Notes under the pieces: generated by a model | Databases searched by the model: none | Told to the model about the DNA's origin: nothing | What the model saw: only the letters and a program-made list of their open reading frames with translations | NCBI GenBank assembly: GCA_965285935.1 | Contig: OZ260662.1 | Coordinates: 122,078,001 to 122,142,000 of the forward strand | Reading direction: 5' to 3' | DNA: 64,000 bases | From: Ophelia neglecta | Taxonomy: Eukaryota | Shown: one piece after another, positions 24,748 through 60,952 of the stretch | Position numbering within the stretch: the first letter of the stretch is position 1 | Layout of the letters: each line of letters starts with the position of its first letter | Program-made: the position numbers and the translations under genes

Positions 24748-27700
24748 TACACTTGGGGTCTATAAAGTTAGGGTTATGGTGTCAATAAGAGCAACGTCTG
24801 CCTTTTTATGAAGTATTCAAGTAATCACAGTTATATCATTCTTTCAAATATACACTCGATTAAAAACGTCATAACGATTGGTAGTTGTTAATACTCAGCT
24901 TTACTACAATAATGTTCTCAAATGACTTAGTTAGTTAGGTATATAACTTAGTTAGCTTTATTACTTTTTGAAATTACCATGCCAATATGAAAGCATTTGG
25001 ATTCGCGTTCACTCTCGTTTACTCGCTTCCACTCGCGTTCTCCGCGACAATATATATATGTATATATCACGCAAGTTTGACACCACGCAGTGACGACCGC
25101 GAAGTCGAGAGTGCATGGCAATTCACGGGGAAAACAGACTGTAACAATTATGGAGGGATAGGTGTACTAAATTTTACCAAGCAAGACAAATGCTTAAAAT
25201 TAAAGCAGGGTCCCCGGTTTATTTCTAGCAGCTAGAACATAATTCAGATGGTTAGGTTTTTACAAGGTATTATCTGGAAGTATCGGATACATCCTTTGGA
25301 ATTGTCAATCATAGAATGTCCCAGACCATTTCGTAGAAACTATAACAGCATGGCAATCATCGTGATTTACGAAATGTAAACCAAAACACAATGAGTATTA
25401 TTTATTGAATATGTATTTCTGGCCACATATATTAAAAAAAGAGCATGGAGAATGGAAGTCTATGTACTGTATATTTTCTTAGCTGCACTTAAGTGAGTAT
25501 ACTAAAGTTTACGGAATCCTGGTGTTAATGATTGGTTTAGTAGTAATAAGTTATGTCAGAGGGACCAAAGCCCATTATCACATTGCACACATGTATTAGA
25601 CAATCCAATAAAATTAACAAAATACGTGGTAATGAACCAACACTATTAACAAACTCTGGTAAGTTGTGTATTAATCAGATCTGGACACGAGAAACAAGGA
25701 ATTTGTATGTAAAATCACAAATTAAATGTTGGTGTTGTGTGCACAAAGGAATCAGAAGTCTTGCAGCGTTTATATTACTAATCTTTCATAATTATCCACT
25801 CTAGTCGGAACTTTCTGAATATAGTACATTTTGATAAGGCGATGGAATAAAAATTGTTATTCACAAACTAGTAATGTTGCGACAAAGGGGCAATTTTATG
25901 TCCTTAATCATGCAAAATATGCAAATCATATGGCAAAATATATACCTCAGGTACTAGAAGGATCTCCCGAATGTCTCATCTGATTGGTAATCTATTAATA
26001 TGTAAGTGTCCCTACACAGTCCAATTGACAGATTAAGAATAAGAAACAATAAATCAATGTTTAGACACCTCGTGCACCACTTTCACAAAACTTGTAACCA
26101 CTTGCATATGTAGACTAAATGATTAATTCGCTTGTAATTTTTTTTGAACCCGATAAAAATCGACTTTGTCTGCTCTTTGTCCAGGTCTAGCACCAAATGT
26201 TTACGTTATGTTGTCAAATAGACTCCCATAGCAAACAAAGTATGTATCCTATGCAATAGGATCTTGAATGAATGATTAATTAAATCAATGGACTAATATT
26301 CTGACTAGGAAATTATAAAAGAAATAAACGTCAAATTGAATTTTATCTGTCAAATCCAAACATATAGCTTCCAATTGTGATCAACACATTTTATATGCCT
26401 ATCGCTGGCGATTTTGTCAAAATCTTAGTGGGGTCATCCTGGTCTTTTCCTTTCTTTTTTTCTTCTCATTATTGTTGGTATATAGGTTGTTATTCTTGGA
26501 CCAAATAGAATATTTCTGGTATTTCTTTCTGATACCTATCACAGACAAACAAATATTGTGGCATGAAAAGTCAGTATTAATAATTTGACCTTGGAAAAGA
26601 GATCAAATTCATAGGATATATCAGGTTACATGAGTAAAAAAAGCAAAAGGGTGTGCCACCCCTGGGATGAGTCGAACCCACGAGACCGAAAACATATGTG
26701 TCACAAAAAGACACCCTTCTTAAGCGCTACGCCACGGAGGAACACTCTAACCCTGACAACAAGACATGGTTCTGTAGTGTAACAAAGGGGTCACTCTGCT
26801 CGCTGAGAAGGAAGGATGCTTATCACCGCTTATTCGTACTCGGTCAGCCTTTCTAATCAGAATAGGCGCCGGCCACTTTGGCAGTTCTATGATTAGTACT
26901 GTTTTGTATCGGAAATGTCGGAGTGTCGGACCCCCCCCCCGTGTGTGTGTTGGGGGGGGGGTACTCTCTATATAAACGTATAAGGGTATGTGCCTCCCCA
27001 AAATAACCCCTTTTTTGCTCCCTCAGACCTCACAAGGCCCTCTGAAAGACCCCCCCTTTTTTATAAATTCCTTTGAACCCCCCCCCCTTTCACAACTCCC
27101 TGTGAAAGACCCCCTTGTTCACAATTGGTTGGTTAAAACATATTTATTTACACCGTGATTTTTTACAATAGCAAAAGCTAATCGGGGTAAGTATCACGAG
27201 ATAACGAAAAGAAATAAATATTTACAAGTTGTCACATGCGTAAGGAATATAGAGACGTATGGTGCGTGTTATGGGATGGATGGATAGATGGATGGATGGA
27301 TATGGATGGATGGATGGATGGATGGATGATTTCGTGCCTGCGGGGTCTACATAGATGCAAACATGTTTAGCGAATGTGACTAAGTGACAAAAGCCTAGTA
27401 CTAATGTAACCAAGGGGGGGAAGTGAGTCGAAGTGACACGTCCACTTAGGTACATAAAGTTTTATTCACTCTCTGTAGCTTACAACCCGCCTGTATTGTA
27501 AACACCTGTAACAATTAAAACTCTTTCATAAGCTACAAGCAACAATTCAGATGCAACTTTAGAATTGTACATTTGATACTTTGATACTAAAACATATATA
27601 CACCTTTACCGTTTGATAATATAGGATAGATACAACATATTTTATGATATTCAACTTTCATACCTAATACCGGCATACAATTCTATAACACACTAATTTA

Positions 27701-30485
27701 ATAGTGCGCACCCTAATCAAAACCATCACATTTCATAATCACAAATACGAGTGTATACCTTGGGTAAAGGTGCTGACTTGCCAATTGACAATTGGCCCAG
27801 GCTTAAAGGATGAATACAAACTTCAACAGGACATAAACCTAGAATGCACAAGAAGACCAATCTAAATTAAGTGTGCAAGCAGAATGAGTGACAATCGGGA
27901 CATTATTTATCTAACTATTTATCTAAAAGCAACACAGCATATTGCCCACCTGGTAAGTATAGTAATTTACAGCTAGGGCTACACAAGAACTAGATTTCCC
28001 CAACAAACACAATAGGCAGTACAGCATATTGGTCACAAAGTAAGAACAAGTACATTATATAAATAGCTTGGGCTGATTGAGGTAGAAATTATATTGACAA
28101 ACCTATTTATGACAGTCCTAAACACAATATAAACATCTGAACAGGTCCTCTCGTAGCAAACTCCCTAGGCCAACTGTGCAGGATCAATGCAAAGTTTTCC
28201 CTCCAAAATGTTGAGACAAAGGGTGGGAGCCAGTATTATAATTGGCTACCACGCACACATAATTAGGTGAAACCTGGGTCAGAAGTCAAACTCTGACATA
28301 CAAATTGAGAGGTCACCAAGGTTGGCCCCAGTTATATGCATCAGTGAACCCAGCTGATTTCAGGACAATAACAAAGACACTAGCCAGCATAAATTAAATT
28401 ACCTAATGTCAACATTAGCACACAGAGCATATTATAATGTAGGGAAAACAGGTAGATATGTTACATCCTTCCCCACTTAGTTTAAATGTCAACATGACCT
28501 TATAGGGCAAACTGACATTACGCCCTACCAACAAGACAACAACTACACATAAAGTACTGAACCTAACTAGACATATAATTTACAATGATATACAATATAT
28601 AAGTACCTACTGCCAGTAACACAGCATAATTTACTATATATAAGTTGAACACTTATATGGAACCATTGTGCCAAGCAAATGGACTGGTGCCTGTGGATGT
28701 GTTTTTTATCTGAATAATGTAATTCAGTAGATAATTACCGTCCCTCAAACGTGCTGGCAACCTGCTGGTCCTTGCAGAGCGAAGGGGAGGGGGAGGTGTA
28801 GGATTTGGGTTTTGGACTGGTACATTACGGGGGGGGGGGGGGTTTTCAAGGTCTCGAGGGATATGCCGTGGGGAGGTGGATACCTCAGCTAAGGGTGTAG
28901 TTTGCACCTCTATGGTAAGCACCTCCGCGTCATCATCTCTTATTGTCTCACTAGCAGGTCCATTCCCAGTACCTTCATCATCGGCTTCATGCTCAGTGTC
29001 CGTATCATGGAAAGTAGTCTCAGTATGGTGGGCAGGGTCAATATCATGGGTAGCGCTCACTGATTTCGTGGTGGGTTGGGTTTCAATGGTTGTAAGTAGT
29101 ATTGGCACTTCTTCCTCATACTCTTCATCAGTGTCTGCGTTACCACTCTCACTTGTCTCCTTCCCTCCGTCAACTTTAGAAGGCTGAGCACATGGGGTTA
29201 CATGTTGAGAGGCCTTCTTGGGAGTACCATTGGGGTCTGGTAAGTCTGACACAATTGGTCCAATAGGTAACAGATTATTTCTGTGCAGAGTACGGACTTT
29301 GGTCTTGGGTTGGTCCTCTGGCCGCACTTGTAATACAGGAATGTCCGGGTTCGGTTGTTTGACTACGACATATACTGGTTCTTCCCAACGGTCGGTGAGT
29401 TTGTGTTTGCCTTCAAACACTAATTTCTTAACCATAACTCGATCGCCCGGCTCAACAACAGCTCCTCTTAATCTGGTGTCGTAACCCTCTTTTTGCTTCA
29501 CACGGGCTCTCTCGGCATGTTCATTCGCCAGCTGATATGCCTTTTTCAAATTTTCTTTGAGTTTTCCTACATACTGTCCATAGGACTCTGGTTTCTGGTC
29601 CAAGCACCACGTCGATTGGGAGTTTTGGGTTCCTTCCGAACATAAGAAGTAAGGGGAGTATCATGTACTCTCGTGACGTGTTAAGTTATAGGCATGGACT
29701 AGCCAGTCGATATGCATTTTCCAGTCTGTCTTCTGTGTAGGGTGGAGTGTACCGAGCATACCAAGGAGGGTCCTGTTCATCCTTTCTGTCATGCCGTTGC
29801 CTGACGGATGATAGGGTGTGGTACGAGATTTCTCCATTCCCGTCAACTGACATAGCTCATGTAATACCTTGCTTTCAAAATTCGCACCTTGGTCTGAATG
29901 GAGGCGTTTTGGGAAACCGAAGTAGGTGACGAAGTTGTGGAGCAGGGCGTCAGCAGTGATCTTTGCAGTCTGATTTCGAGTAGGGACCGCTATAGCGTAC
30001 CTGGTAAAATGGTCTGTGATCACCAAAACGTTGGCGAAACCACCTTTGGAGTTTTCTAGTGACAGGAAGTCCATGGATACCAGTTCCAAGGGCTGTGTGG
30101 TTTTAATACTGACTAGTGGGGCGTGCTGGTTGATTGGTGTCTTCCTCCTGATACAGCGATCACATCGTTTGACCCATTGCTTGATTGACTCGGTCATACC
30201 TGGCCAGTAGAATCGTTCTCGAATAAGTTGGAGAGTTCTGTCCTGTCCAGGGTGTCCCATATTGTCGTGCAGAGATTCCAATGCATGTCTCTGGAGGCTG
30301 TGTGGTAGTACAATTTGATATCGTTCTTCTTCGTTGATCTCTGCTCGGCGACATAACACTCCTCGTACCATCACTAACCGCGGCTGCTCTCTGACAAAGG
30401 GCCTTACTAATTCAGAAGGTATGGGACCACAATACTTGCTCTGGACCAATCTAATTACTTCACGGATGGCAAGATCGTCTTGCTG
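24746..30485. repeat. Recent 5.76-kb tandem duplication, copy B
   Basis: As copy A; continues into element E1. Confidence 0.95.
27405..28465 (-). repeat. LTR2 (1061 bp; 6-bp deletion near the U3 end)
   Basis: Near-identical to LTR1; gatatgttaca versus gatatgacactgttaca. Confidence 0.93.
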
Positions 30486-33165
30486 GGCTCTTCTCAGATG
30501 CCTATTTTCTGCTACCGGATCTTCTTCATCTAGTTCGAAGATGGCATTCGTCATGCATATAGTATCCAGCAGTTTCGCACTTGGTGTCTGTAGACTACTG
30601 CAGATAGTTGCCACTGACTCGACATTGACCTCATTGTAATACTCATTTCCTCTGTGTGGTAGACGGGATAAAATGTCTGCATCGACATTGTTCACTCCGG
30701 GTCGGTATTTGATTGAGAACTTGTAATTTGCTAAGGCAGCGACCCAACGATGACCGGTGGCATCCAGTTTCGCAGTTGTCAAGATGTAAGTGAGTGGGTT
30801 ATTATCAGTGTGTACGGTGAACTCGGGTGCGCCATACAAGTACTGACTAAATTTCTCTGTTATAGCCCACTTCAAACAGAGGAATTCGAGCTTGTGCTGG
30901 ATAATTCTTTTCGGTTCTCTTTAGTCCACGGCTGGCAAACGCAATTGGCTTCAACACCCCTTCATGGTCCTGGTAAAGGACAGCGCCAAGGCCTTCATTG
31001 CTGGCGTCAGTGTGGAGATGAAACTTGAGTGTTGTAGATGGGTATGATAATACTGGAGGTGAAGTTAAAGCATCCTTAAGGCTTCGAAAGGATGTCTCTT
31101 CCTCCTCTTCCCATTTCCACGGCTTTGGCCGGATTACAATCTTTTTGCCCTTCTTACGCCGTTCTCCACCCTTAAGATCATTCAGCGGACGAGCCTTGCT
31201 AGCAAAGTTCTTGACAAATGAGCGGTAATAGCCGGCAAACCCTAGGAACTGAGACAACTCTTTCACACAGGTAGGGGTAGGCCACTCCTTTATCCTAGCT
31301 ACTTTGTCAGGATCAGTCTCTACACCATTGGCAGTCATCACATGTCCAAGAAATTTCACTCGACTCTTGAGAAAGGAGCACTTCTTCGTTGATAGTTTTA
31401 AACCGCACTCCTCAATACGTTGAAATACTTTCCCAATATTGGCTAGATGTTCCTCAAACGTACGACTGAAGATGATTATATCATCGAGATAAATCACGCA
31501 GATTTTGTGATTCAGGTCCCCGAGCATGTCCTCCATCATGCGCTGATATGTCGCAGGCGCATTTGTCAAGCCAAACGCCATCCTGTTCCACTCAAAGAAG
31601 CCGAGGGGTCCAGCAGTGAAGGCTGTGTAAGCCTTGTCATTCTCGTTGATCTTTATCTGATGATAACCTGACTTCATATCTAAGACGCTAAAGTACTTTG
31701 CCCCATCCAGACAATCGAGTATGTCCTCTAACCGTGGTAGAGCGTAAGAGTCCTGGATTGTCCTTTGGTTCAACTGACGGAAGTCAATACACAGGCGTAG
31801 GTCACCATTTTTTCGACGAGCGATCACCATGTTTGATGCCCACGGACTTCGAGAGTGGCGTATCAATCCAGTGTTGAGTAAGGTTTGCAGATGATCCCTA
31901 ACTTCATCGTAACATGCGGGAGGGATACGGCGGTATGGCTGCTTGAATGGTTGCTGGTTGTTCAAATTGATATTGATCTCCGCAGTAGGGTGACATCCTA
32001 CGTCAGTATCGCTGTGACTGAAGATATGTGTCCATGACTACAAAAGTTCTTTCATCTCATTGAATTCAGCTTCGGTGCAGGCTGTATCGTCTTGATCGAA
32101 GTCTAACTTGAGACCAGGTGGTAAGTCTACTCTCGGGTGATCATTTGAAGATTGGTCAGGTGAAGTGCCAGGTAAGTCGACGGGCGGTAGTATAGTCACG
32201 GGTTGTAGCTCGCAAAGGATGGCTCTTGGGGGGATGACTAAAGTCTGCAGCGAGTGATTGGTGATGCGGACTGGGATGGGCAACTGGTGATCAGGTGAGA
32301 AGTTGTTCACCCCGGGGGCGATCTCTGCAGCATCAGGTAAGATCAACTTGGATGTCGACTGTAACATAGCCGTACATTGCCGGTATGGTATGTTGTCAGT
32401 AGTATAACCCTGGACAGTCATGGTCTTATTGGGAGGTACTACTATGGATTGGTCTTCACTACTCTTGACAATGGCTAACCGGCCGGCACGGTTGACTTTG
32501 CGTTCCTGTATCGACATACATCGGAAGGCTAGATACCACGGGTTAGTAAGTGGGGCTCTTTGGAGGTATCTTTCACCATATGTCTCAAGAGTGTCCGCTT
32601 GGACAGCTCGGAGAAAGTTGGTACCTAAATTTATGGGGACATTTGAACTAAAGGGAGTATCACGAGTTACTAACAATAAACATGGCTTTTCTAGATTCGG
32701 CATAATACTAGGCACCTTCAAAACAACTTCCACTACTCCAATGTAGTCAAGTAATTGACCACTAGCACTCTCTACTTCCAATAAGGATTCTAATGATTGC
32801 AAAGTTACACCTCTGGGTTCTAATCTCTCTCTAAAAAAGGTTTCACTCACCGTTGAAACACCAGACCCTGTGTCCAATAAAGCACTGACACAAACATTAG
32901 AGACATGAGGGTAAGTAGTACCTAGCTTTTCATCACCATTCATATTTACATTCAAATTCACAGAGACATCATCATTTTTCATCTTGTTTTCAGACTCGAT
33001 ATTCAATGCATTAATAGAATCAAATTCACATTTATCTACACTACATTCATCTTCAAAAAATACAATTTCAATATTACATATGTTGGTGTCACCGACGAGT
33101 TGTGGGGGCTGCCTCTCCTGACCTATCGTCGTGCCCCGGTAGAAGTAGGTCCGCTCTGGTTTAAA
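28653..33165 (-). pseudogene. pol: E1 pol (PR-RT-RH-IN), disrupted
   Basis: LLDTGS, YLDD, TDAS and DDE motifs; stops at 32038 and 29661; frameshift ~30895. Confidence 0.93.
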
Positions 33166-34391
33166 TGATGGGTTATTACTGTACATTGGTATTGGGTGTG
33201 ACCGAAATTCCCACATCGCCAACATTGGATGGGTCGACGCTGTCTTGGCGGAGCTGAGGTACCAGGGTGCATGGGTATATCACGGTGAGTTCCATAGTCC
33301 GTGGGCTGTCTCGAAGCAGATTCAGGTGGTGTAGCGTAGTTCGTGGCAGAAGCTGGTGAGAACCCAGCATTAACCGGAGACGAGAACGACAGGCTACTGT
33401 AATAATCATTGGGTGCCATCATAACGGAAGGATCACCATACCCCGGTAAGTTGTTGTATGAAGGAGCAGGTTGCAGAGGTGAGTGATAAGAGGCAGCATG
33501 TGGGTTCAGGTTGGTAGGTTGATTCTAGCGGGATCCATGTTCCGATTTCGTTAAGCGTGACACCTGTTGCTGTAGGTTTGTAACCTGATGTTTCAAAGCT
33601 TGAAGTTCATTGTTGTCAGGCGCCATTACTGATGTCACCTGGTCATGACTGGTAGTTTTGGTGCTTGACTTCCCTGTCTCAGTTTCAAGTTGACGAATAG
33701 CTATCCTCAAGTCATCAAAGTCCTTAATGGCATCGAATTTGAACCGTGATTTTTCTTTCAAAGCAGGCCGAAGCCCTGACCAGAATTTGCTTCTCAGCAT
33801 CTCTTCTTGGGTGGTCTCACCAAGTGATGCTTTGTCTTTTGCCTGTAGGAGCAGGTCCTCTAGCCTACCACTCCACTACACAACGTTCTCGCCATCTTTC
33901 TGCTTGGCTTGATAAAAGTCTGACAATATTTCTTCACTGGACTCGACAGAGCCATATAAATTGTCAAGGCGAGACAACAAGTCCTTGGTCAAGGCTTTAT
34001 CACCCAATCTCATCGCAACACGAGCAGGACCACCTTTAAGTGACTTCCTTACTTGATGATTGAGAATAGCTTCAGTTAAAGTTCCACTTTTCATGAGACA
34101 GCTTACTTCATAACGCCATAAGTCATAAGTTGTGTCTTTTCCCATCTCGCCAGAAAATGTACTGATCTTAGGAGGTAAGGTCATCCGGGACGTGACTTGA
34201 GCTGTGGCCTCTAAATCCATCTTCTGTTCTTGCCCAGGCTCTACTTTGGTGGGAGATGGTTGACGAGATGAGGCAAATTCTAACATAAGTTTGGCCAAGT
34301 CATCAGGAGAGTCTCCCTTCGGTCTAAGTCCAAGTGCTGCAAAGGCTCTGCCAAAACCTTCTAAGTCCTCCTGGCTGAAAGGTCCTGACAT
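33123..34391 (-). pseudogene. gag: E1 gag (PNMA-like capsid + CCHC), two in-frame stops
   Basis: ORF pieces 33876-34391, 33525-33800 and 33123-33422 are in one frame; CWRCGNFGHTQYQC. Confidence 0.92.
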
Positions 34392-34420
34392 GGTAAAAAA
34401 ATCCTCACTGGGGGCTCCAA

Positions 34421-34625
34421 TGTAACCAAGGGGGGGAAGTGAGTCGAAGTGACACGTCCACTTAGGGACATAAAGTTTTATTCACTCTCTGTAGCTTACA
34501 ACCCGCCTGTATTGTAAACACCTAACAAAGACACTAGCCAGCATAAATTAAATTACCTAATGTCAACATTAGCACACAGAGAATATTATAATGTAGGGAA
34601 AACAGGTAGATATGACACTGTTACA
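34421..34625 (-). repeat. LTR3 (shared; 205 bp, 862-bp internal deletion)
   Basis: Both termini intact; junction acacct|aacaaagacac at 34523/34524. Confidence 0.93.
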
Positions 34626-34811
34626 TCCTTCACCACTTAGTTTAAAGTCAACATGACCTTATAGGGCAAACTGACATTACGCCCTACCAACAAGACAACA
34701 ACTACACATAAAGTACTGAACCTAACTAGACATATAATTTACAATGATATACAATATATAAGTACCTACTGCCAGTAACACAGCATAATTTACTATATAT
34801 AAGTTGAACAC

Positions 34812-40551: not shown

Positions 40552-40580
40552 GGTAAAAAAATCCTCACTGGGGGCTCCAA

Positions 40581-46715: not shown

Positions 46716-46744
46716 GGTAAAAAAATCCTCACTGGGGGCTCCAA

Positions 46745-47811: not shown

Positions 47812-47998
47812 TCCTTCCTTACTTAGTTTAAATGTCAACATGACCTTATAGGGCAAACTGACATTACGCCCTACCAACAAGACAACAACTACACATAAAG
47901 TACTGAACCTAACTAGACATATAATTTACAATGATATACAATATATAAGTACCTACTGCCAGTAACACAGCATAATTTACTATATATAAGTTGAACAC

Positions 47999-50900: not shown

Positions 50901-52515
50901 TCGCAGGCGCATTTGTCAAGCCAAACGCCATCCTGTTCCACTCAAAGAAGCCGAGGGGTCCAGCAGTGAAGGCTGTGTAAGCCTTGTCATTCTCGTTGAT
51001 CTTTATCTGATGATAACCTGACTTCATATCTAAGACGCTAAAGTACTTTGCCCCATCCAGACAATCGAGTATGTCATCTAACCGTGGTAGAGCGTAAGAG
51101 TCCTGGATTGTCCTTTGGTTCAACTGACGGAAGTCAATACACAGGCGCAGGTCACCATTTTTTCGACGAGCGATCACCATGTTTGATGCCCACGGACTTC
51201 GAGAGTGGCGTATCAATCCAGTGTTGAGTAAGTTTTGCAGATGATCCCTAACTTCATCGTAACATGCGGGAGGGATACGGCGGTATGGCTGCTTGAATGG
51301 TTGCTGGTTGTTCAAATTGATATTGATCTCCGCAGTAGGGTGACATCCTACGTCAGTATCGCTGTGACTGAAGATATGTGTCCATGACTTCAAAAGTTCT
51401 TTCATCTCATTGAATTCAGCTTCGGTGCAGGCTGTATCGTCTTGATCGAAGTCTAACTTGAGACCAGGTGGTAAGTCTACACTCGGGTGATCATTTGAAG
51501 ATTGGTCAGGTGAAGTGCCAGGTAAGTCGACGGGCGGTAGTATAGTCACGGGTTGTAGCTCGCAAAGGATGGCTCTTGGGGGGATGACTAAAGTCTGCAG
51601 CGAGTGATTGGTGATGCGGACTGGGATGGGCAACTGGTGATCAGGTGAGAAGTTGATCACCCCGGGGGCGATCTCTGCAGCATCAGGTAAGATCGACTTG
51701 GATGTCGACTGTAACATAGCCGTACATTGCCGGTATGGTATGTTGTCAGTAGTATAACCCTGGACAGTCATGGTCTTATTGGGAGGTACTACTATGGATT
51801 GGTCTTCACTACTCTTGACAATGGCTAACCGGCCGGCACGGTTGACTTTGCGTTCCTGTATCGACATACATCGGAAGGCTAGATACCACGGGTTAGTAAG
51901 TGGGGCTCTTTGGAGGTATCTTTCACCATATGTCTCAAGAGTGTCCGCTTGGACAGCTCGGAGAAAGTTGGTACCTAAATTTATGGGGACATTTGACCTA
52001 AAGGGAGTATCACGAGTTACTAACAATAAACATGGCTTTTCTAGATTCGGCATAATACTAGGCACCTTCAAAACAACTTCCACTACTCCAATGTAGTCAA
52101 GTAATTGACCACTAGCACTCTCTACTTCCAATAAGGATTCTAATGATTGCAAAGTTACACCTCTGGGTTCTAATCTCTCTCTAAAAAAGGTTTCACTCAC
52201 CGTTGAAACACCAGACCCTGTGTCCAATAAAGCACTGACACAAACATTAGAGACATGAGGGTAAGTAGTACCTAGCTTTTCATCACCATTCATATTTACA
52301 TTCAAATTCACAGAGACATCATCATTTTTCATCTTGTTTTCAGACTCGATATTCAATGCATTAATAGAATCAAATTCACATTTATCTACACTACATTCAT
52401 CTTCAAAAAATACAATTTCAATATTAGATATGTTGGTGTCACCGACGAGTTGTGGGGGCTGCCTCTCCTGACCTATCGACGTGCCCCGGTAGAAGTAGGT
52501 CCGCTCTGGTTTAAA
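47999..52515 (-). pseudogene. pol: E4 pol; most intact copy (PR-RT-RH-IN core open), frameshifted in the IN C-terminus
   Basis: 1235-aa ORF 48868-52575 with DTG, YLDD, RNase H, HHCC and DDE motifs; frame lost after PIDVVLGL. Confidence 0.95.
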
Positions 52516-53741
52516 TGATGGGTTATTACTGTACATTGGTATTGGGTGTGACCGAAATTCCCACATCGCCAACATTGGATGGGTCGACGCTGTCTTGGCG
52601 GAGCTGAGGTACCAGGGTGCATGGGTATATCACGGTGAGTTCCATAGTCCGTGGGCTGTCTCGAAGCAGATTCAGGTGGTGTAGCGTTGTTCGTGGCAGA
52701 AGCTGGTGAGAACCCAGCATTAACCGGAGACGAGAACGACAGGCTACTGTAATAATCATTGGGTGCCATCATAACGGAAGGATCACCATACCCCGGTAAG
52801 TTGTTGTATGAAGGAGCAGGTTGCAGAGGTGAGTGATAAGAGGCAGCATGTGGGTTCAGGTTGGTAGGTTGATTCTAGCGGGATCCATGTTCCGATTTCG
52901 TTAAGCGTGACACCTGTTGCTGTAGGTTTGTAACCTGATGTTTCAAAGCTTAAAGTTCATTGTTGTCAGGCGCCATTACTGATGTCACCTGGGCATGACT
53001 GGTAGTTTTGGTGCTTGACTTCCCTGTCTCAGTTTCAAGTTGACGAATAGCTATCCTCAAGTCATCAAAGTCCTTAATGGCATCGAATTTGAACCGTGAT
53101 TTTTCTTTCAAAGCAGGCCGAAGCCCTGACCAGAATTTGCTTCTCAGCATCTCTTCTTGGGTGGTCTCACCAAGTGATGCTTTGTCTTTTGCCTGTAGGA
53201 GCAGGTCCTCTAGCCTACCACTCCACTGCACAACGTTCTCGCCATCTTTCTGCTTGGCTTGATAAAAGTCTGACAATATTTCTTCACTGGACTCGACAGA
53301 GCCATATAAATTGTCAAGGCGAGACAACAAGTCCTTGGTCAAGGCTTTATCACCCAATCTCATCGCAACACGAGCAGGACCACCTTTAAGTGACTTCCTT
53401 ACTTGATGATTGAGAATAGCTTCAGTTAAAGTTCCACTTTTCATGAGACAGCTTACTTCATAACGCCATAAGTCATAAGTTGTGTCTTTTCCCATCTCGC
53501 CAGAAAATGTACTGATCTTAGGAGGTAAGGTCATCCGGGACGTGACTTGAGCTGTGGCCTCTAAATCCATCTTCTGTTCTTGCCCAGGCTCTACTTTGGT
53601 GGGAGATGGTTGACGAGATGAGGCAAATTCTAACATAAGTTTGGCCAAGTCATCAGGAGAGTCTCCCTTCGGTCTAAGTCCAAGTGCTGCAAAGGCTCTG
53701 CCAAAACCTTCTAAGTCCTCCTGCCTGAAAGGTCCTGACAT
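52473..53741 (-). pseudogene. gag: E4 gag, two in-frame stops
   Basis: TAA at 52950 and TAG at 52875. Confidence 0.92.
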
Positions 53742-53770
53742 GGTAAAAAAATCCTCACTGGGGGCTCCAA

Positions 53771-54838
53771 TGTAACCAAGGGGGGGGAAGTGAGTCGAAG
53801 TGACACGTCCACTTAGGTACATAAAGTTTTATTCACTCTCTGTAGCTTACAACCCGCCTGTATTGTAAACACCTGTAACAATTAAAACACTTTGATAAGC
53901 TACAAGCAACAATTCAGATGCAACTTTAGAATTGTACATTTGATACTTTGATACTAAAACATATATACACCTTTACCGTTTGATAATATAGGATAGATAC
54001 AACATATTTTATGATATTCAACTTTCATACCTAATACCGGCATACAATTCTATAACACACTAATTTAATAGTGCGCACCCTAATCAAAACCATCACATTT
54101 CATAATCACAAATACGAGTGTATACCTTGGGTAAAGGTGCTGACTTGCCAATTGACAATTGGCCCAGGCTTAAAGGATGAATACAAACTTCAACAGGACA
54201 TAAACCTAGAATGCACAAGAAGACCAATCTAAATTAAGTGTGCAAGCAGAATGAGTGACAATCGGGACATTATTTATCTAACTATTTATCTAAAAGCAAC
54301 ACAGCATATTGCCCACCTGGTAAGTATAGTAATTTACAGCTAGGGCTACACAAGAACTAGATTTCCCCAACAAACACAATAGGCAGTACAGCATATTGGT
54401 CACAAAGTAAGAACAAGTACATTATATAAATAGCTTGGGCTGATTGAGGTAGAAATTATATTGACAAACCTATTTATGAAAGTCCTAAACACAATATAAA
54501 CATCTGAACAGGTCCTCTCGTAGCAAACTCCCTAGGCCAACTGTGCAGGATCAATGCAAAGTTTTCCCTCCAAAATGTTGAGACAAAGGGTGGGAGCCAG
54601 TATTATAATTGGCTACCACGCACACATAATTAGGTGAAACCTGGGTCAGAAGTCAAACTCTGACATACAAATTGAGAGGTCACCAAGGTTGGCCCCAGTT
54701 ATATGCATCAGTGAACCCAGCTGATTTCAGGACAATAACAAAGACACTAGCCAGCATAAATTAAATTACCTAATGTCAACATTAGCACACAGAGCATATT
54801 ATAATGTAGGGAAAACAGGTAGATATGACACTGTTACA
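53771..54838 (-). repeat. LTR6 (shared, full, one extra G)
   Basis: 1068 bp, between the PBS of E4 and the PPT of E5. Confidence 0.93.
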
Positions 54839-54850
54839 TCCTTCCCCACT
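54839..54850 (-). promoter_or_regulatory. Polypurine tract AGTGGGGAAGGA (also 22729, 28466; variants at 34626, 40786, 47812)
   Basis: Purine run immediately before TGTAACA on the minus strand. Confidence 0.9.
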
Positions 54851-55025
54851 TAGTTTAAATGTCAACATGACCTTATAGGGCAAACTGACATTACGCCCTA
54901 CCAACAAGACAACAACTACACATAAAGTACTGAACCTAACTAGACATATAATTTACAATGATATACAATATATAAGTACCTACTGCCAGTAACACAGCAT
55001 AATTTACTATATATAAGTTGAACAC

Positions 55026-58000
55026 TTATATGGAACCATTGTGCCAAGCAAATGGACTGGTGCCTGTGGATGTGTTTTTTATCTGAATAATGTAATTCAG
55101 TAGATAATTACCGTCCCTCAAACGTGCTGGCAACCTGCTGGTCCTTGCAGAGCGACGGGGAGGGGGAGGTGTAGGATTTGGGTTTTGGACTGGTACATTA
55201 CGGGGGGGGGGGGGGGGGGGTTTCAAGGTCTCGAGGGATATGCCGTGGGGAGGTGGATACCTCAGCTAAGGGTGTAGTTTGCACCTCTATGGTAAGCACC
55301 TCCGCGTCATCATCTCTTATTGTCTCACTAGCAGGTCCATTCCCAGTACCTTCATCATCGGCTTTATGCTCAGTGTCCGTATCATGGAAAGTAGTCTCAG
55401 TATGGTGGGCAGGGTCAATATCATGGGTAGCGCTCACTGATTTCGTGGTGGGTTGGGTTTCAATGGTTGTAAGTAGTATTGGCACTTCTTCCTCATACTC
55501 TTCATCAGTGTCTGCGTTACCACTCTCACTTGTCTCCTTCCCTCCGTCAACTTTAGAAGGCTGAGCACATGGGGTTACATGTTGAGAGGCCTTCTTGGGA
55601 GTACCATTGGGGTCTGGTAGGTCTGACACAATTGGTCCAATAGGTAACAGATTATTTCTGTGCAGAGTACGGACTTTGGTTGACTTGAGTTGGTCCTCTG
55701 GCCGCACTTGTAATACAGGAATGTCCGGGTTCGGTTGTTTGACTACGACATATACTGGTTCTTCCCAACGGTCGGCGAGTTTGTGTTTGCCTTCAAACAC
55801 TAATTTCTTAACCAGAACTCGATCGCCCGGCTCAACAACAGCTCCTCTTAATCTGGTGTCGTAACCCTCTTTTTGCTTCACACGGGCTCTCTCGGCATGT
55901 TCATTCGCCAGCTAATATGCCTTTTTCAAATTTTCTTTGAGTTTTTCTACATACTGTCCATAGGACTCTGGTTTCTAGTCCAAGCACCACGTCGATTGGG
56001 AGTTTTGGGTTCCTTCCGAACATTAGGAAGTAAGGGGAGTATCATGTACTCTCATGACGTGTACAGTTATAGGCATGGACTAGCCAGTCGATATGCATTT
56101 TCCAGTCTGTCTTCTGTGTAGGGTGGAGTGTACCGAGCATACCAAGGAGGGTCCTGTTCATCCTTTCTGTCATGCCGTTGCCTGACGGATGATAGGGTGT
56201 GGTACGAGATTTCTCCATTCCCGTCAACTGACATAGCTCATGTAATACCTTGCTTTCAAAATTCGCACCTTGGTCTGAATGGAGGCGTTTTGGGAAACCG
56301 AAGTAGGTGACGAAGTTGTGGAGCAGGGCGTCAGCAGTGATCTTTGCAGTCTGATTTCGAGTAGGGACCGCTATAGCGTACCTGGTAAAATGGTCTGTGA
56401 TCACCAAAACGTTGGCGAAACCACCTTTGGAGTTTTCTAGTGACAGGAAGTCCATGGATACCAGTTCCAAGGGCTGTGTGGTTTTAATACTGACTAGTGG
56501 GGCGTGCTGGTTGATTGGTGTCTTCCTCCTGATACAGCGATCACATCGTTTGACCCATTGCTTGATTGACTCGGTCATACCTGGCCAGTAGAATCGTTCT
56601 CGAATAAGTTGGAGAGTTCTGTCCTGTCCAGGGTGTCCCATATTGTCGTGCAGAGATTCCAATGCATGTCTCTGGAGGCTGTGTGGTAGTACAATTTGAT
56701 ATCGTTCTTCTTCGTTGATCTCTGCTCGGCGACATAACACTCCTCGTACCATCACTAACCGTGGCTGCTCTCTGACAAAGGGCCTTACTAATTCAGAAGG
56801 TATGGGACCACAATACTTGCTCTGGACCAATCTAATTACTTCACGGATGGCAAGATCGTCTTGCTGGGCTCTTCTCAGATGCCTATTTTCTCCTACCGGA
56901 TCTTCTTCATCTAGTTCGAAGATGGCATTCGTCATGCATATAGTATCCAGCAGTTTCGCACTTGGTGTCTGTAGACTACTGCAGATAGTTGCCACTGACT
57001 CGACATTGACCTCATTGTGATACTCATTTCCTCTGTGTGGTAGACGGGATAAAATGTCTGCATCGACATTGTTCACTCCGGGTCGGTATTTGATTGAGAA
57101 CTTGTAATTTGCTAAGGCAGCGACCCAACGATGACCGGTGGCATCCAGTTTCGCAGTTGTCAAGATGTAAGTGAGTGGGTTATTATCAGTGTGTACGGTG
57201 AACTCGGGTGCGCCATACAAGTACTGACTAAATTTCTCTGTTATAGCCCACTTCAAACAGAGGAATTCGAGCTTGTGTGCTGGATAATTCTTTTCGGTTC
57301 TCTTTAGTCCACGGCTGGCAAACGCAATTGGCTTCAACACCCCTTCATGGTCCTGGTAAAGGACAGCGCCAAGGCCTTCATTGCTGGCGTCAGTGTGGAG
57401 ATGAAATTTGAGTGTTGTAGATGGGTATGATAATACTGGAGGTGAAGTTACAGCATCCTTAAGGCTTCGAAAGGATGTCTCTTCCTCCTCTTCCCATTTC
57501 CACGGCTTTGGCCGGATTACAATCTTTTTGCCCTTCTTACGCCGTTCTCCACCCTTAAAATCATTCAGCGGACGAGCCTTGCTAGCAAAGTTCTTGACAA
57601 ATGAGCGGTAATAGCCGGCAAACCCTAGGAACTGAGACAACTCTTTCACACAGGTAGGGGTAGGCCACTCCTTTATCCTAACTACTTGGTCAGGATCAGT
57701 CTCTACACCATTGGCAGTCATCACATGTCCAAGAAATTTCACTCGACTCTTGAGAAAGGAGCACTTCTTCGTTGATAGTTTTAAACCGCACTCCTCAATA
57801 CGTTGAAATACTTTCCCAATATTGGCTAGATGTTCCTCAAACGTACGACTGAAGATGATTATATCATCGAGATAAATCACGCAGATTTTGTGATTCAGGT
57901 CCCCGAGCATGTCCTCCATCATGCGCTGATATGTCGCAGGCGCATTTGTCAAGCCAAACGCCATCCTGTTCCACTCAAAGAAGCCGAGGGGTCCAGCAGT

Positions 58001-59548
58001 GAAGGCTGTGTAAGCCTTGTCATTCTCGTTGATCTTTATTTGATGATAACCTGACTTCATATCTAAGACGCTAAAGTACTTTGCCCCATCCAGACAATCG
58101 AGTATGTCCTCTAACCGTGGTAGAGCGTAAGAGTCCTGGATTGTCCTTTGGTTCAACTGACGGAAGTCAATACACAGGCGTAGGTCACCATTTTTTCGAC
58201 GAGCGATCACCATGTTTGATGCCCACGGACTTCGAGAGTGGCGTATCAATCCAGTGTTGAGTAAGGTTTGCAGATGATCCCTAACTTCATCGTAACATGC
58301 GGGAGGGATACGGCGGTATGGCTGCTTGAATGGTTGCTGGTTGTTCAAATTGATATTGATCTCCGCAGTAGGGTGACATCCTACGTCAGTATCGCTGTGA
58401 CTGAAGATATGTGTCCATGACTTCAAAAATTCTTTCATCTCATTGAATTCAGCTTCGGTGCAGGCTGTATCGTCTTGATCGAAGTCTAACTTGAGACCAG
58501 GTGGTAAGTCTACACTCGGGTGATCATTTGAAGATTGGTCAGGTGAAGTGCCAGGTAAGTCGACGGGCGGTAGTATAGTCACGGGTTGTAGCTCGCAAAG
58601 GATGGCTCTTGGGGGGATGACTAAAGTCTGCAGCGAGTGATTGGTGATGCGGACTGGGATGGGCAACTGGTGATCAGGTGAGAAGTTGATCACCCCGGGG
58701 GCGATCTCTGCAGCATCAGGTAAGATCGACTTGGATGTCGACTGTAACATAGCCGTACATTGCCGGTATGGTATGTTGTCAGTAGTATAACCCTGGACAG
58801 TCATGGTCTTATTGGGAGGTACTACTATGGATTGGTCTTCACTACTCTTGACAATGGCTAACCGGCCGGCACGATTGACTTTGCGTTCCTGTATCGACAT
58901 ACATCGGAAGGCTAGATACCACGGGTTAGTAAGTGGGGCTCTTTGGAGGTATCTTTCACCATATGTCTCAAGAGTGTCCGCTTGGACAGCTCGGAGAAAG
59001 TTGGTACCTAAATTTATGGGGACATTTGAACTAAAGGGAGTATCACGAGTTACTAACAATAAACATGGCTTTTCTAGATTCGGCATAATACTAGGCACCT
59101 TCAAAACAACTTCCACTACTCCAATGTAGTCAAGTAATTGACCACTAGCACTCTCTACTTCCAATAAGGATTCTAATGATTGCAAAGTTACACCTCTGGG
59201 TTCTAATCTCTCTCTAAAAAAGGTTTCACTCACCGTTGAAACACCAGACCCTGTGTCCAATAAAGCACTGACACAAACATTAGAGACATGAGGGTAAGTA
59301 GTAACTAGCTTTTCATCACCATTCATATTTACATTCAAATTCACAGAGACATCATCATTTTTCATCTTGTTTTCAGACTCGATATTCAATGCATTAATAG
59401 AATCAAATTCACATTTATCTACACTACATTCATCTTCAAAAAATACAATTTCAATATTAGATATGTTGGTGTCACCGACGAGTTGTGGGGGCTGCCTCTC
59501 CTGACCTATCGACGTGCCCCGGTAGAAGTAGGTCCGCTCTGGTTTAAA
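55026..59548 (-). pseudogene. pol: E5 pol; open through the IN catalytic core, then TGA and frameshifts
   Basis: 1188-aa ORF 56042-59608. Confidence 0.95.
59487..59548 (-). promoter_or_regulatory. -1 ribosomal frameshift signal: U UUA AAC + predicted H-type pseudoknot (present in all five copies)
   Basis: Gag codons CAT TTA AAC; the -1 frame TTT AAA CCA is the pol frame (FKP); 7-nt spacer, then GACCTA/TAGGTC and GGGGC/GCCCC pairings. Confidence 0.85.
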
Positions 59549-60774
59549 TGATGGGTTATTACTGTACATTGGTATTGGGTGGGACCGAAATTCCCACATC
59601 GCCAACATTGGATGGGTCGACGCTGTCTTGGCGGAGCTGAGGTACCAGGGTGCATGGGTATATCACGGTGAGTTCCATAGTCCGTGGGCTGTCTCGAAGC
59701 AGATTCAGGTGGTGTAGCGTAGTTCGTGGCAGAAGCTGGTGAGAACCCAGTATTAACCGGAGACGAGAACGACAGGCTACTGTAATAATCATTGGGTGCC
59801 ATCATAACGGAAGGATCACCATACCCCGGTAAGTTGTTGTATGAAGGAGCAGGTTGCAGAGGTGAGTGATAAGAGGCAGCATGTGGGTTCAGGTTGGTAG
59901 GTTGATTCTAGCGGGATCCATGTTCCGATTTCGTTAAGCGTGACACCTGTTGCTGTAGGTTTGTAACCTGATGTTTCAAAGCTTAAAGTTCATTGTTGTC
60001 AGGCGCCATTACTGATGTCACCTGGGCATGACTGGTAGTTTTGGTGCTTGACTTCCCTGTCTCAGTTTCAAGTTGACGAATAGCTATCCTCAAGTCATCA
60101 AAGTCCTTAATGGCATCGAATTTGAACCGTGAATTTTCTTTCAAAGCAGGCCGAAGCCCTGACCAGAATTTGCTTCTCAGCATCTCTTCTTGGGTGGTCT
60201 CACCAAGTGATGCTTTGTCTTTTGCCTGTAGGAGCAGGTCCTCTAGCCTACCACTCCACTGCACAACGTTCTCGCCATCTTTCTGCTTGGCTTGATAAAA
60301 GTCTGACAATATTTCTTCACTGGACTCGACAGAGCCATATAAATTGTCAAGGCGAGACAACAAGTCCTTGGTCAAGGCTTTATCACCCAATCTCATCGCA
60401 ACACGAGCAGGACCACCTTTAAGTGACTTCCTTACTTGATGATTGAGAATAGCTTCAGTTAAAGTTCCACTTTTCATGAGACAGCTTACTTCATAACGCC
60501 ATAAGTCATAAGTTGTGTCTTTTCCCATCTCGCCAGAAAATGTACTGATCTTAGGAGGTAAGGTCATCCGGGACGTGACTTGAGCTGTGGCCTCTAAATC
60601 CATCTTCTGTTCTTGCCCAGGCTCTACTTTGGTGGGAGATGGTTGACGAGATGAGGCAAATTCTAACATAAGTTTGGCCAAGTCATCAGGAGAGTCTCCC
60701 TTCGGTCTAAGTCCAAATGCTGCAAAGGCTCTGCCAAAACCTTCTAAGTCCTCCTGGCTGAAAGGTCCTGACAT
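59506..60774 (-). pseudogene. gag: E5 gag, two in-frame stops; knuckle His->Pro
   Basis: TAA at 59983, TAG at 59908; CWRCGNFGPTQYQC. Confidence 0.92.
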
Positions 60775-60784
60775 GGTAAAAAAA

Positions 60785-60802
60785 TCCTCACTGGGGGCTC
60801 CA
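60785..60802 (-). promoter_or_regulatory. Primer-binding site TGGAGCCCCCAGTGAGGA, probably tRNA-Thr (also 34402-34419, 40562-40579, 46726-46743, 53752-53769)
   Basis: 1 nt inside the LTR end and begins TGG. The plus strand reads atcctcactgggggct-cca, like a tRNA 3' end. Thr(UGU) is assigned from recalled similarity and is unverified. Confidence 0.8.
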
Positions 60803-60803
60803 A

Positions 60804-60913
60804 TGTAACCAAGGGGGGGAAGTGAGTCGAAGTGACACGTCCACTTAGGTACATAAAGTTTTATTCACTCTCTGTAGCTTACAACCCGCCTGTATTGTAA
60901 ACACCTGTAACAA
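60804..60913 (-). repeat. LTR7 (outermost 5' LTR, truncated to the PBS-proximal ~109 bp)
   Basis: Matches the LTR up to acacctgtaacaa, then unrelated sequence follows. Confidence 0.9.
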
Positions 60914-60952
60914 AATAAAGTAGGGTTTGGTTATATTTGGAGGCAGCACTAC

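What the first reader, a model, noticed from the sequence alone, without database searches (positions are those of the whole stretch)
27405..60913. Gypsy retrotransposon turned into a ~7-kb macrosatellite: five internal domains chained by single shared LTRs
Seen: LTR-I-LTR-I-LTR-I-LTR-I-LTR-I-LTR(truncated). Each internal LTR is flanked by a PPT and a PBS, with no host DNA or TSD between units, and all units point the same way. Established: normal integration gives two LTRs per element plus a TSD; shared-LTR tandems arise by LTR-LTR unequal recombination or from 1-LTR circles. Inference: this is a young retroelement-derived satellite in expansion; five units of a full-size element is unusually long.
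Basis: partly seen in the sequence, partly recalled or inferred. Interest (0 to 1): 0.8.

Follow-up and report, generated by a model that had tools for sequence, protein, structure and literature searches.

The report
Five-unit tandem Gypsy retrotransposon array
One Ty3/Gypsy retrotransposon near a chromosome end has been copied locally, at the DNA level, into five head-to-tail units that share single LTRs; this kind of structure is already known from plants and flies, but here the sequence variants show step by step how the array grew.

Summary
Window 27405-60913 holds, on the minus strand, LTR-I-LTR-I-LTR-I-LTR-I-LTR-I-LTR(truncated) of a Ty3/Gypsy element. Every junction reads PPT|LTR|PBS with no host DNA between units.

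- Two shared LTRs carry the same 862-bp deletion, which gives the 6.16-kb versus 7.03-kb units.
- A 5.76-kb microhomology-mediated tandem duplication (18990-24747 = 24746-30487) adds a copy of host flank, LTR and 2 kb of internal region.
- The array lies 159-193 kb from the end of a 122-Mb contig, inside a roughly 10-copy subtelomeric block whose paralogues lack the element.

Units differ by 0.3-0.7%, mostly by substitutions. Outgroup-polarised shared variants show each middle unit to be a recombinant of the 5' part of its downstream neighbour and the 3' part of its upstream neighbour. That is the signature of in-register unequal crossing-over inside the internal region, seen three times in succession. 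A nonsense mutation and the LTR deletion were copied along with their units, so growth was by DNA duplication and not by retrotransposition.

A related Gypsy family forms 6-, 4- and 2-unit shared-LTR arrays elsewhere in this genome. The kind is known (rice, Drosophila, kangaroo, TRIMs), so this is a new member of it. No spanning long reads were available to confirm the unit number.

The parts
18990..21661 (.). F': duplicated copy of the host flank (left half of the 5.76-kb tandem duplication)
   Evidence: 18990-24747 matches 24746-30487 at 99.4%. F' differs from F by 11 mismatches in 2672 bp.
21662..22728 (-). LTR_a, a full 1067-bp LTR and the duplicate of LTR_0
   Evidence: 2 substitutions and one 6-bp indel relative to LTR_0.
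22729..24747 (-). Partial internal region: the 3' 2.02 kb (integrase C-terminal part to PPT), a duplicate of the I1 3' end. It ends at the duplication junction, which has GG(G) microhomology.
   Evidence: 2 substitutions in 2019 bp relative to I1; junction sequences.
24746..27404 (.). F: host flank on the element's 3' side. 25488-27126 is homologous to the subtelomeric paralogous blocks. 27129-27404 is a 276-bp dispersed repeat with an internal (GGAT)n that abuts the LTR.
27405..28465 (-). LTR_0, the terminal 3' LTR of the array (1061 bp, with a 6-bp deletion near its 5' end)
28466..34420 (-). I1 internal region (PBS to PPT, 5955 bp). Its 3' half is the most divergent lineage. It carries a 2-bp deletion at alignment columns 3525-3526, a 1-bp deletion at column 4780 and a derived stop at column 4760.
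34421..34625 (-). LTRdel_1: a 205-bp LTR lacking LTR positions 103-964. Both TATATA motifs are lost; AATAAA and the TG..CA ends are kept.
34626..40580 (-). I2 internal region, a recombinant: I1-like in columns 1-2127 and I3-like from column 2443 onward
   Evidence: (p=7e-6).
40581..40785 (-). LTRdel_2, identical to LTRdel_1 (0 differences)
40786..46744 (-). I3 internal region. It shares the derived nonsense change at column 4047 with I2.
46745..47811 (-). LTR_3, a full shared LTR (1067 bp)
47812..53770 (-). I4 internal region, a recombinant: I3-like in columns 47-2538 and I5-like in columns 3353-5439. ORFs: gag 52950-53822 and pol 48868-52575 (RT, RNase H, integrase).
53771..54838 (-). LTR_4, a full shared LTR (1068 bp), with 2 substitutions relative to LTR_3
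54839..60803 (-). I5 internal region, the 5'-most unit. Its 5' half is the outgroup to the other units. It has a derived stop at column 4760.
60804..60913 (-). Truncated 5' LTR: only the last ~110 bp, including AATAAA. It is followed by 9 unmatched bp (60914-60922) and then the subtelomeric block.

Best explanation
A single Ty3/Gypsy insertion sits in one copy of a multi-copy subtelomeric block. It was turned into a shared-LTR tandem array by repeated unequal homologous exchange between misaligned copies on sister chromatids or homologues, and it now evolves like any macrosatellite.

Inferred order of events:
1. Monomer.
2. Dimer (I5, I1). The mechanism of this step is not resolvable.
3. Trimer. 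The middle unit is the 5' part of I1 joined to the 3' part of I5, with the crossover between alignment columns 2375 and 3123.
4. An 862-bp deletion in the LTR between I3 and I1.
5. I4 forms from the 5' part of I3 and the 3' part of I5 (crossover between columns 2538 and 3353).
6. I2 forms from the 5' part of I1 and the 3' part of I3 (crossover between columns 2127 and 2443). This step also duplicated the deleted LTR and a nonsense mutation.

Two further events occurred separately. A microhomology-mediated 5.76-kb tandem duplication copied host flank, LTR_0 and the 3' 2 kb of I1. A deletion removed most of the 5' LTR together with about 650 bp of host DNA.

Shown directly: the structure, the mosaic variant pattern, the absence of dispersed near-identical copies, and the empty paralogous sites. 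Inferred: that the exchanges were unequal crossovers and not long conversion tracts, and the exact order of events.
For: Structure.

Differences between units are real divergence and not sequencing noise. Each pair differs by 19-41 substitutions and only 2-4 indels, and adjacent units are the most alike.

Mosaic pattern:
- Variants shared by I1 and I2 all lie in columns 543-2115, apart from one indel column in the poly-C tract at 5587.
- Variants shared by I2 and I3 all lie in columns 2443-5959.
- Variants shared by I3 and I4 lie in columns 47-2538.
- Variants shared by I4 and I5 lie in columns 3353-5439.
- The breakpoint test for I2 gives p=7e-6 before correction over 45 possible splits.

Outgroup copies (90-92% identical) show that most of these shared states that they cover are derived. 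They also reveal the older step: column 2375 is derived in I4 through I1, and columns 3123 and 5116 are derived in I5 through I2.

LTRdel_1 and LTRdel_2 are identical, and LTR_3 differs from LTR_4 by 2 substitutions.

Edge units are the most divergent, as expected for arrays that evolve by unequal exchange.

No other copy at 93% identity or more of the internal region exists in the 762-Mb assembly, so retrotransposition did not make these copies.

Paralogous blocks place F-like and right-flank-like DNA about 650 bp apart with no element between them.

Solo LTRs of the family with 4-bp TSDs (TTCG, TTAT) confirm the LTR ends and show that LTR-LTR recombination operates in this family.

A second, independent array exists in two versions with 6 and 4 units. 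The 4-unit version contains an A2/A3 recombinant unit.
Against: - No long reads span the array. The only public runs are short-read contigs of a single sample, and they cannot give unit number because the flank is itself multi-copy.
- A few sites conflict with the simple history: columns 2538, 4299 and 4760. These need gene conversion or recurrent mutation.
- The I4 breakpoint rests on only 3 + 4 informative sites.
- The 5' LTR is truncated, so no TSD can prove a single integration.
- The origin of the first dimer and of the LTR deletion could equally involve reverse-transcription products.
Confidence: 0.78

Rival explanations
1. The array was seeded by reverse-transcription products and not by LTR-LTR exchange. 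In this reading the first tandem step, the deleted LTR, or both, arose in one of two ways: a 1-LTR circle recombined into the resident copy, or a multimeric cDNA integrated. Later growth was by unequal exchange. An aberrant cDNA with a deleted U3, inserted by a single crossover within the internal region, would give LTR-I-LTRdel-I-LTR, which is the structure seen.
For: - The deleted LTR sits between two full internal regions and is flanked by full LTRs.
- Three independent rearrangements end within about 8 bp of each other, at LTR positions 958-965: LTRdel, the truncated LTR_5, and the short-form LTR junction 613|863.
- Related arrays A and C lack the family's 4-bp TSD, which does not fit a simple single integration followed by exchange.
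- The literature leaves this route open (PMC11899658).
Against: - No direct trace exists. The end product is identical to unequal exchange followed by a genomic deletion.
- The nearest TATATA lies 93 bp upstream of the recurrent breakpoint, so the breakpoint is not obviously the U3/R boundary.
- The three traceable steps are plain homologous exchanges.
- No free copy with 205-bp LTRs exists in the genome.
Confidence: 0.13
2. The array is an assembly artefact: the assembler over-expanded a one- or two-copy element, or stacked haplotypes in tandem.
For: - No spanning reads were examined.
- Elsewhere on this chromosome, array B starts right after a 100-N gap and repeats the flanks of array A at 99.5-99.8% identity. 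This assembly may therefore contain uncollapsed haplotigs.
- Short-read contig depth over the unit is no higher than over the flank.
Against: - There are five distinct unit sequences, which is more than the two haplotypes a diploid can supply. They have an ordered, outgroup-supported mosaic relationship.
- Differences are substitutions and not homopolymer errors.
- There are two LTR forms at defined junctions.
- The window has no gap.
- The flank used for the depth comparison has about 10 copies, so equal depth is what a roughly 5-copy unit would give.
- Contigs of one sample carry both alleles at column 819.
Confidence: 0.07
3. The units are independent insertions: repeated integration of the same element into the same site or into each other's LTRs (double insertion or nesting).
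For: Double insertion is a documented route to TE tandems in Drosophila (PMC5932611).
Against: - Junctions contain exactly one LTR, with no TSD, no second LTR and no target-site remnant.
- Defective features (the nonsense change at column 4047 and the 862-bp LTR deletion) are shared by neighbouring units.
- No dispersed siblings exist.
Confidence: 0.02

Closest known systems
Tandem LTR-retrotransposon structures in plants (rice TLI1/TLI2, IDENTAM survey; Morales-Diaz et al. 2025, PMC11899658)
   Same: Alternating LTR and internal regions that share internal LTRs. They are mostly Gypsy, have very high identity between units, and are reported as copy-number polymorphic.
   Different: - The host here is an animal (an invertebrate, according to earlier scan notes).
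- There are five or six units, against the mostly two described in detail there.
- There is no TSD here because the 5' LTR is truncated.
- That paper could not tell insertion-as-tandem from recombination. Here the variant mosaic resolves three growth steps as exchanges within the internal region.
Shared-LTR tandems from ectopic LTR recombination in Drosophila (McGurk and Barbash 2018, PMC5932611, Fig. 1A; Ke and Voytas 1997 as cited there)
   Same: The same model: the TE's own repeats seed a dimer, and unequal exchange then expands it towards a satellite.
   Different: The Drosophila cases were inferred from short-read junctions and are mostly low-copy. Here the whole array is assembled, and the traceable exchanges lie outside the LTR.
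Long tandem arrays of TRIM/Cassandra elements (PMC7215508) and KERV arrays at kangaroo centromeres (as cited in PMC11899658)
   Same: LTR-internal-LTR-internal arrays whose copy number is thought to fluctuate by unequal crossing-over.
   Different: Those are miniature non-autonomous elements or centromeric retroviral arrays. This is a full-size 7-kb coding element in a subtelomeric block.
Classical macrosatellites and rDNA-like tandem arrays evolving by unequal sister-chromatid exchange
   Same: Kilobase-scale units, the highest similarity between neighbouring units, divergent edge units, and whole-unit gain and loss.
   Different: Only five units (33.5 kb). The unit is a recognisable retrotransposon, and no function is known.

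Membership tests
Ty3/Gypsy LTR retrotransposon | pol domain order RT, then RNase H, then integrase | tested here: met
   RVT_1 (1e-35), RT_RNaseH and RT_RNaseH_2 (1e-30), Integrase_H2C2 (4e-22) and rve (3e-17), in that order, in the 1235-aa and 1188-aa ORFs.
Ty3/Gypsy LTR retrotransposon | LTRs with TG...CA ends and short terminal inverted repeats | tested here: met
   TGTAAC...GTTACA. The same ends are seen on solo LTRs elsewhere.
Ty3/Gypsy LTR retrotransposon | PBS directly after the 5' LTR and PPT directly before the 3' LTR | tested here: met
   The PBS TGGAGCCCCCAGTGAGG lies 1 nt after each LTR, in 5 places. The PPT AAGTrrGGAAGGA lies before each LTR. The matching tRNA was not identified.
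Ty3/Gypsy LTR retrotransposon | Target-site duplication | tested here: inconclusive
   Solo LTRs of the family (80-90% identical) have 4-bp TSDs, TTCG and TTAT. At the array itself the 5' LTR is truncated and host DNA is missing, so no TSD can be read.
Ty3/Gypsy LTR retrotransposon | gag and aspartic protease | tested here: inconclusive
   The gag ORF matches Pfam PNMA (3e-7). No protease family is detected in the 470 aa upstream of RT, even at E<=1. The gag and pol frames are separated by 321 nt with no open link.
Shared-LTR tandem LTR-retrotransposon array (as defined in PMC11899658) | Alternating LTR and internal regions with exactly one LTR between internal regions and no host DNA | tested here: met
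Shared-LTR tandem LTR-retrotransposon array (as defined in PMC11899658) | The array starts and ends with an LTR and is flanked by one TSD | tested here: not met
   The 3' end has a full LTR. The 5' end has only 110 bp of LTR. No TSD is readable, and about 650 bp of host DNA present in the paralogues is missing. This fits secondary deletion and is not evidence against the class.
Shared-LTR tandem LTR-retrotransposon array (as defined in PMC11899658) | Unit number polymorphic between haplotypes or individuals | not testable with these tools
   Only contigs of one sample were available, and the flank is multi-copy. Indirect support: related array A/B exists with 6 and 4 units.
Satellite/macrosatellite DNA | Long homogeneous array (tens to thousands of units), usually at several loci | tested here: not met
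   Five units at one locus. There are no other copies at 93% identity or more.

The most novel reading that the evidence does not exclude
This Gypsy clade is defined by the shared PBS TGGAGCCCCCAGTGAG and the GGAAGGA|TGTAAC PPT-LTR junction. It may have an intrinsic tendency to form shared-LTR arrays through reverse-transcription intermediates, meaning 1-LTR circles or multimeric cDNA that enter by homologous recombination.

That would explain three observations: at least three independent array loci among roughly a dozen loci of the clade in one genome, the absence of TSDs at arrays A and C, and a recurrent breakpoint at LTR positions 958-965.
Probability: 0.13. Interest if true: 0.6.

Novelty: new member of a known kind. 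Interest (0 to 1): 0.38.

Why it matters
Shared-LTR tandem arrays are a recognised but mechanistically unsettled class. The main recent survey states that it could not decide between insertion as a tandem and recombination (PMC11899658). This locus is a fully assembled animal example in which unit-specific, outgroup-polarised variants allow three successive growth steps to be read. All three are in-register exchanges inside the coding region, and they carry a nonsense mutation and a promoter-less LTR along with them.

The locus therefore documents how a transposon becomes an ordinary tandem repeat. The same genome offers several arrays (5, 6, 4 and 2 units) for testing copy-number polymorphism and the circle hypothesis. 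It does not reveal a new kind of element or mechanism.

Tried and rejected
1. **Copy number from public reads.** Only three runs of one sample exist, all kept as short-read contigs. Depth over the unit is roughly equal to depth over the flank. I first read this as single copy. I then found that the flank is a block of about 10 copies at 94-97% identity, so the depth says nothing either way.

2. **Precise empty site and TSD from paralogues.** F-like and right-flank-like DNA are adjacent in nine paralogues. In the window, about 650 bp of that DNA is missing, and a 276-bp dispersed repeat plus 9 unmatched bp intervene. No TSD can therefore be read.

3. **Breakpoint as the U3/R boundary.** I considered that the recurrent breakpoint at LTR position 965 marks the transcription start. 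This is not supported, because the nearest TATATA lies 93 bp upstream. It stays unexplained.

4. **TSDs at related arrays A and C.** None is found at the family's 4-bp length.

6. **Rfam and tRNA scans of the window.** Nothing was found. There are no ORFs of 120 aa or more in 1-19000.

7. **ESM Atlas search with pol.** It returned only generic Gypsy pol clusters from several animal phyla and gave no host identification.

8. **LTR self-comparison.** There is no internal tandem duplication that could explain the long-form versus short-form LTRs.


Full report
**Observation**

A repeat scan and a BLAST self-comparison show in-register copies with start-to-start spacings of 5740, 6159, 6162, 7026 and 7030 bp at 99.1-99.5% identity. 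The window contains no N.

All long ORFs in the repeat are on the minus strand. Pfam finds a PNMA-like gag. It also finds a pol with RVT_1, RT_RNaseH and RT_RNaseH_2, Integrase_H2C2 and rve, in that order, which is the Ty3/Gypsy arrangement.

Reading the junctions in element orientation gives the LTR limits:
- A polypurine tract (AAGTrrGGAAGGA) comes first.
- The LTR follows, beginning TGTAAC and ending GGTTACA.
- One T follows, and then the primer-binding site TGGAGCCCCCAGTGAGG.

Solo LTRs of the same family elsewhere in the genome have the same termini and 4-bp target-site duplications, TTCG and TTAT.

The exact parts are given under 'parts'. In element orientation they run: truncated LTR_5 (110 bp), I5, LTR_4, I4, LTR_3, I3, LTRdel_2, I2, LTRdel_1, I1, LTR_0, then host flank F. 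Every junction holds exactly one LTR and no other DNA.

- The two unit sizes come from a single 862-bp deletion (LTR positions 103-964) present in two shared LTRs. These two LTRs are identical to each other. The deletion removes both TATATA motifs and keeps AATAAA and the termini.
- Upstream of the stated start, 18990-24747 is a 99.4% copy of 24746-30487. This is a 5.76-kb tandem duplication containing 2.66 kb of host flank, a full LTR and the 3' 2.02 kb of the internal region. Its junction shows only GG(G) microhomology, so it is a non-homologous, replication-type or end-joining-type duplication and is not LTR-mediated.
- The window is G000:C2:122078001-122142000, and C2 is 122,297,944 bp long. 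The array therefore lies 159-193 kb from the contig end.
- Both flanks belong to a block present in about ten copies at 94-97% identity, nearly all close to contig ends. In nine paralogues, the F-like sequence and the right-flank-like sequence lie about 650 bp apart with no element between them. The element therefore entered this one copy after the block had multiplied.
- In the window that 650 bp is absent. A 276-bp dispersed repeat with an internal (GGAT)n abuts LTR_0; it has at least 180 candidate copies genome-wide. Nine unmatched bases separate the truncated LTR_5 from the block. The simplest reading is a later deletion that removed most of the 5' LTR together with adjacent DNA. As a result no target-site duplication can be read.

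**Are the units real?**

- Pairs of internal regions differ by 19-41 substitutions and only 2-4 indel events (0.32-0.69%). Neighbouring units are the most similar. This is not the pattern of homopolymer sequencing error.
- Five different unit sequences cannot come from stacking the two haplotypes of a diploid.
- The only public runs are short-read contigs of one sample. Laid on 58000-63900, their unit contigs carry the majority letter at all eight I5-private sites. Across the three runs of that one sample they carry both alleles at column 819. Their depth over the unit is similar to the depth over the flank.
- Because the flank is itself multi-copy, that depth neither supports nor contradicts five units. 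The unit number therefore rests on the assembly alone.

**How the array grew**

Of 81 variable alignment columns, the informative ones are sharply partitioned:
- Variants shared by I1 and I2 lie in columns 543-2115, apart from one indel column in the poly-C tract at 5587.
- Variants shared by I2 and I3 lie only in columns 2443-5959.
- Variants shared by I3 and I4 lie only in columns 47-2538.
- Variants shared by I4 and I5 lie only in columns 3353-5439.

A breakpoint test for I2 gives p=7e-6 before correction for 45 possible splits.

I polarised these sites with three diverged copies from elsewhere in the genome, 90-92% identical. Most of the shared states that the outgroups cover are derived. 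The same analysis uncovers an older layer: column 2375 is derived in I4 through I1, and columns 3123 and 5116 are derived in I5 through I2.

Each middle unit is thus the 5' part of its downstream neighbour joined to the 3' part of its upstream neighbour. This is exactly the product expected when two copies of the array pair one unit out of register and cross over inside the internal region.

The inferred history is:
1. Monomer.
2. Dimer (I5, I1).
3. Trimer, with the I3 ancestor as the recombinant.
4. LTR deletion.
5. I4.
6. I2.

The duplicated segments of the last two steps differ by about 0.15-0.2%. The 5.76-kb duplication differs by about 0.1-0.26%. The oldest comparison, the 3' half of I1 against the others, differs by about 1.1%.

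The edge units are the most divergent, as expected for arrays homogenised by unequal exchange. A few sites conflict with this history (columns 2538, 4299 and 4760) and require conversion or recurrent change.

**DNA-level amplification, not retrotransposition**

- The genome holds no other copy of the internal region above 92% identity.
- Apart from one short-form LTR on C7 (98-100% identical over its retained blocks), the nearest LTRs outside the array are about 90% identical.
- Defects were copied with their units. The derived nonsense change at column 4047 is shared by I3 and I2, and the promoter-less LTR occurs twice.
- Four of the five units carry a nonsense or frameshift change in pol: I1 has the 2-bp deletion at 3525-3526 and a stop at 4760, I2 has the stop at 4047 and a 2-bp deletion at 4685-4686, I3 has the stop at 4047, and I5 has the stop at 4760.
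- In all units the gag and pol frames are 321 nt apart, and no protease domain is detected.

**The same thing elsewhere in this genome**

The search with the internal region revealed a family about 70% identical, with the same PBS and the same PPT-LTR junction, that also sits in shared-LTR arrays:
- Array A, C2:108186441-108231094: seven 1350-bp LTRs and six internal regions, period 7218 bp, 99.6-99.9% identity.
- Array B, C2:108587672-108617917: five LTRs and four internal regions.
- Array C, C7:2800837-2816827: three LTRs and two internal regions, inside a 38-bp minisatellite.

A and B have the same flanks at 99.5-99.8% identity, and B's homology begins right after a 100-N gap. B is therefore either the other haplotype or a recent segmental duplicate. 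Unit B2 combines A2-type and A3-type variants, and B3 is A4/A5-like, so the two versions differ by whole units lost or gained through in-register exchange.

All ten A/B units share a ~200-bp insert that the 98%-identical single copies lack. Here again a mutated copy was amplified as DNA. Neither A nor C has a 4-bp TSD.

**Comparison with what is known**

Shared-LTR tandems are described in the following systems:
- Rice and other plants, where Gypsy elements predominate, the loci are polymorphic, and the authors state that they could not decide between insertion as a tandem and recombination (PMC11899658).
- Drosophila, where ectopic LTR recombination is given as the standard route and unequal exchange as the route to satellites (PMC5932611).
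- Cassandra/TRIM arrays (PMC7215508).
- Kangaroo centromeres, as cited in PMC11899658.

The present locus belongs to this class. Its particular value is that the growth steps are legible. They use the whole unit, not only the LTR, as the substrate for exchange. One animal genome also offers several such arrays.

**Unresolved points**

- How the first dimer and the LTR deletion arose. LTR-LTR exchange followed by genomic deletion, and recombination of a 1-LTR circle or aberrant cDNA, give the same product.
- Why three independent rearrangements end within about 8 bp at LTR positions 958-965. These are LTRdel, the truncated LTR_5, and the short-form LTR junction seen in other copies and in a read contig.
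- The true unit number in the sequenced individual.

**Verdict**

This is a real and well-resolved shared-LTR tandem Gypsy array: a new member of a known kind, of moderate interest.

Noticed in passing
L023-L028 (G000:C2:108186441-108231094); L029-L033 (C2:108587672-108617917); L034-L035 (C7:2800837-2816827): A related Gypsy family (about 70% identical, same PBS and same PPT-LTR junction) forms shared-LTR arrays of 6, 4 and 2 internal regions with 1350-bp LTRs and a period of 7218-7325 bp. None has a 4-bp TSD at its ends. The C7 array sits inside a 38-bp minisatellite.
   Followed up: partly
L029 position 1567-1666 (N run) and the flanks of arrays A and B: Arrays A and B share flanks at 99.5-99.8% identity, and B's homology starts right after a 100-N scaffold gap, 400 kb from A. 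B may be an uncollapsed haplotig, which would make 6 versus 4 units an allelic difference. Unit B2 is an A2/A3 recombinant.
   Followed up: partly
L024:6065-6265 approx. (query positions 1057-1256): All ten A/B units carry a ~200-bp insert in the gag-proximal region. It is absent from the 98%-identical single copies, and it occurs on its own at 100% identity at C8:73282824, C5:7991520 and C5:7955858. It is probably a small mobile element that inserted before the array was amplified.
   Followed up: no
window 25488-27126 and 60923-63900: Both flanks belong to a block of about 10 copies at 94-97% identity, found almost only near contig ends (C1 148.36 Mb; C6 0.15 Mb; C2 0.24, 0.50, 1.30 and 120.74 Mb; C28, C41, C7 1.67 Mb; C9 0.45 Mb). 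This is a subtelomeric paralogous block.
   Followed up: partly
window 27129-27404: A 276-bp dispersed repeat with an internal (GGAT)n microsatellite has at least 180 candidate copies genome-wide at 80-97% identity. It lies exactly between the paralogous block and LTR_0 and is absent from the paralogues. It looks like a SINE or MITE, but no tRNA or Rfam match was found.
   Followed up: partly
window 60895-60925, 34520-34530, 40680-40690; LTR positions 958-965: Three independent rearrangements end within about 8 bp of each other: the 862-bp LTR deletion, the truncation of the 5' LTR, and the 613|863 junction of short-form LTRs. The short-form junction is seen in other copies and as a loose end at 60906 in read contigs. 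The breakpoints lie 93 bp downstream of a TATATA and 41 bp upstream of AATAAA. The cause is unknown.
   Followed up: partly
G000:C7:98679667-98680114: This is a short-form LTR made of blocks 1-271, 529-613 and 863-965 of the query. It is 98-100% identical to the array's LTR and has no internal region nearby. It is the only near-identical relative outside the array, and it could not be fetched.
   Followed up: no
window 60923-61150 and paralogues (L037-L045): This is a very high-copy host repeat, with contig word depth of about 2,400-8,800 against about 40-130 nearby. It is made of GGTTACATTTGGGG / CCCCGAAATGTAACC motifs. One version, TTGGTTACATTTGGAGGCAG, closely resembles the element's LTR end plus the start of its PBS, TTGGTTACATTGGAGCCCCCAG. 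This may be coincidence, a target preference, or common descent.
   Followed up: no
L005/L007 (C5:102.58 and 100.53 Mb); L008-L010 (C9:22.81, 23.07, 23.08 Mb): Solo LTRs of the family recur with identical flanks and identical TSDs at two or three places each. The loci that carry them were therefore themselves segmentally duplicated.
   Followed up: no
G000:C5:37452371, 37457267, 37465102: Three hits to a more distant Gypsy pol (66% identical) are spaced 4.9 and 7.8 kb apart. This may be another clustered or tandem arrangement.
   Followed up: no
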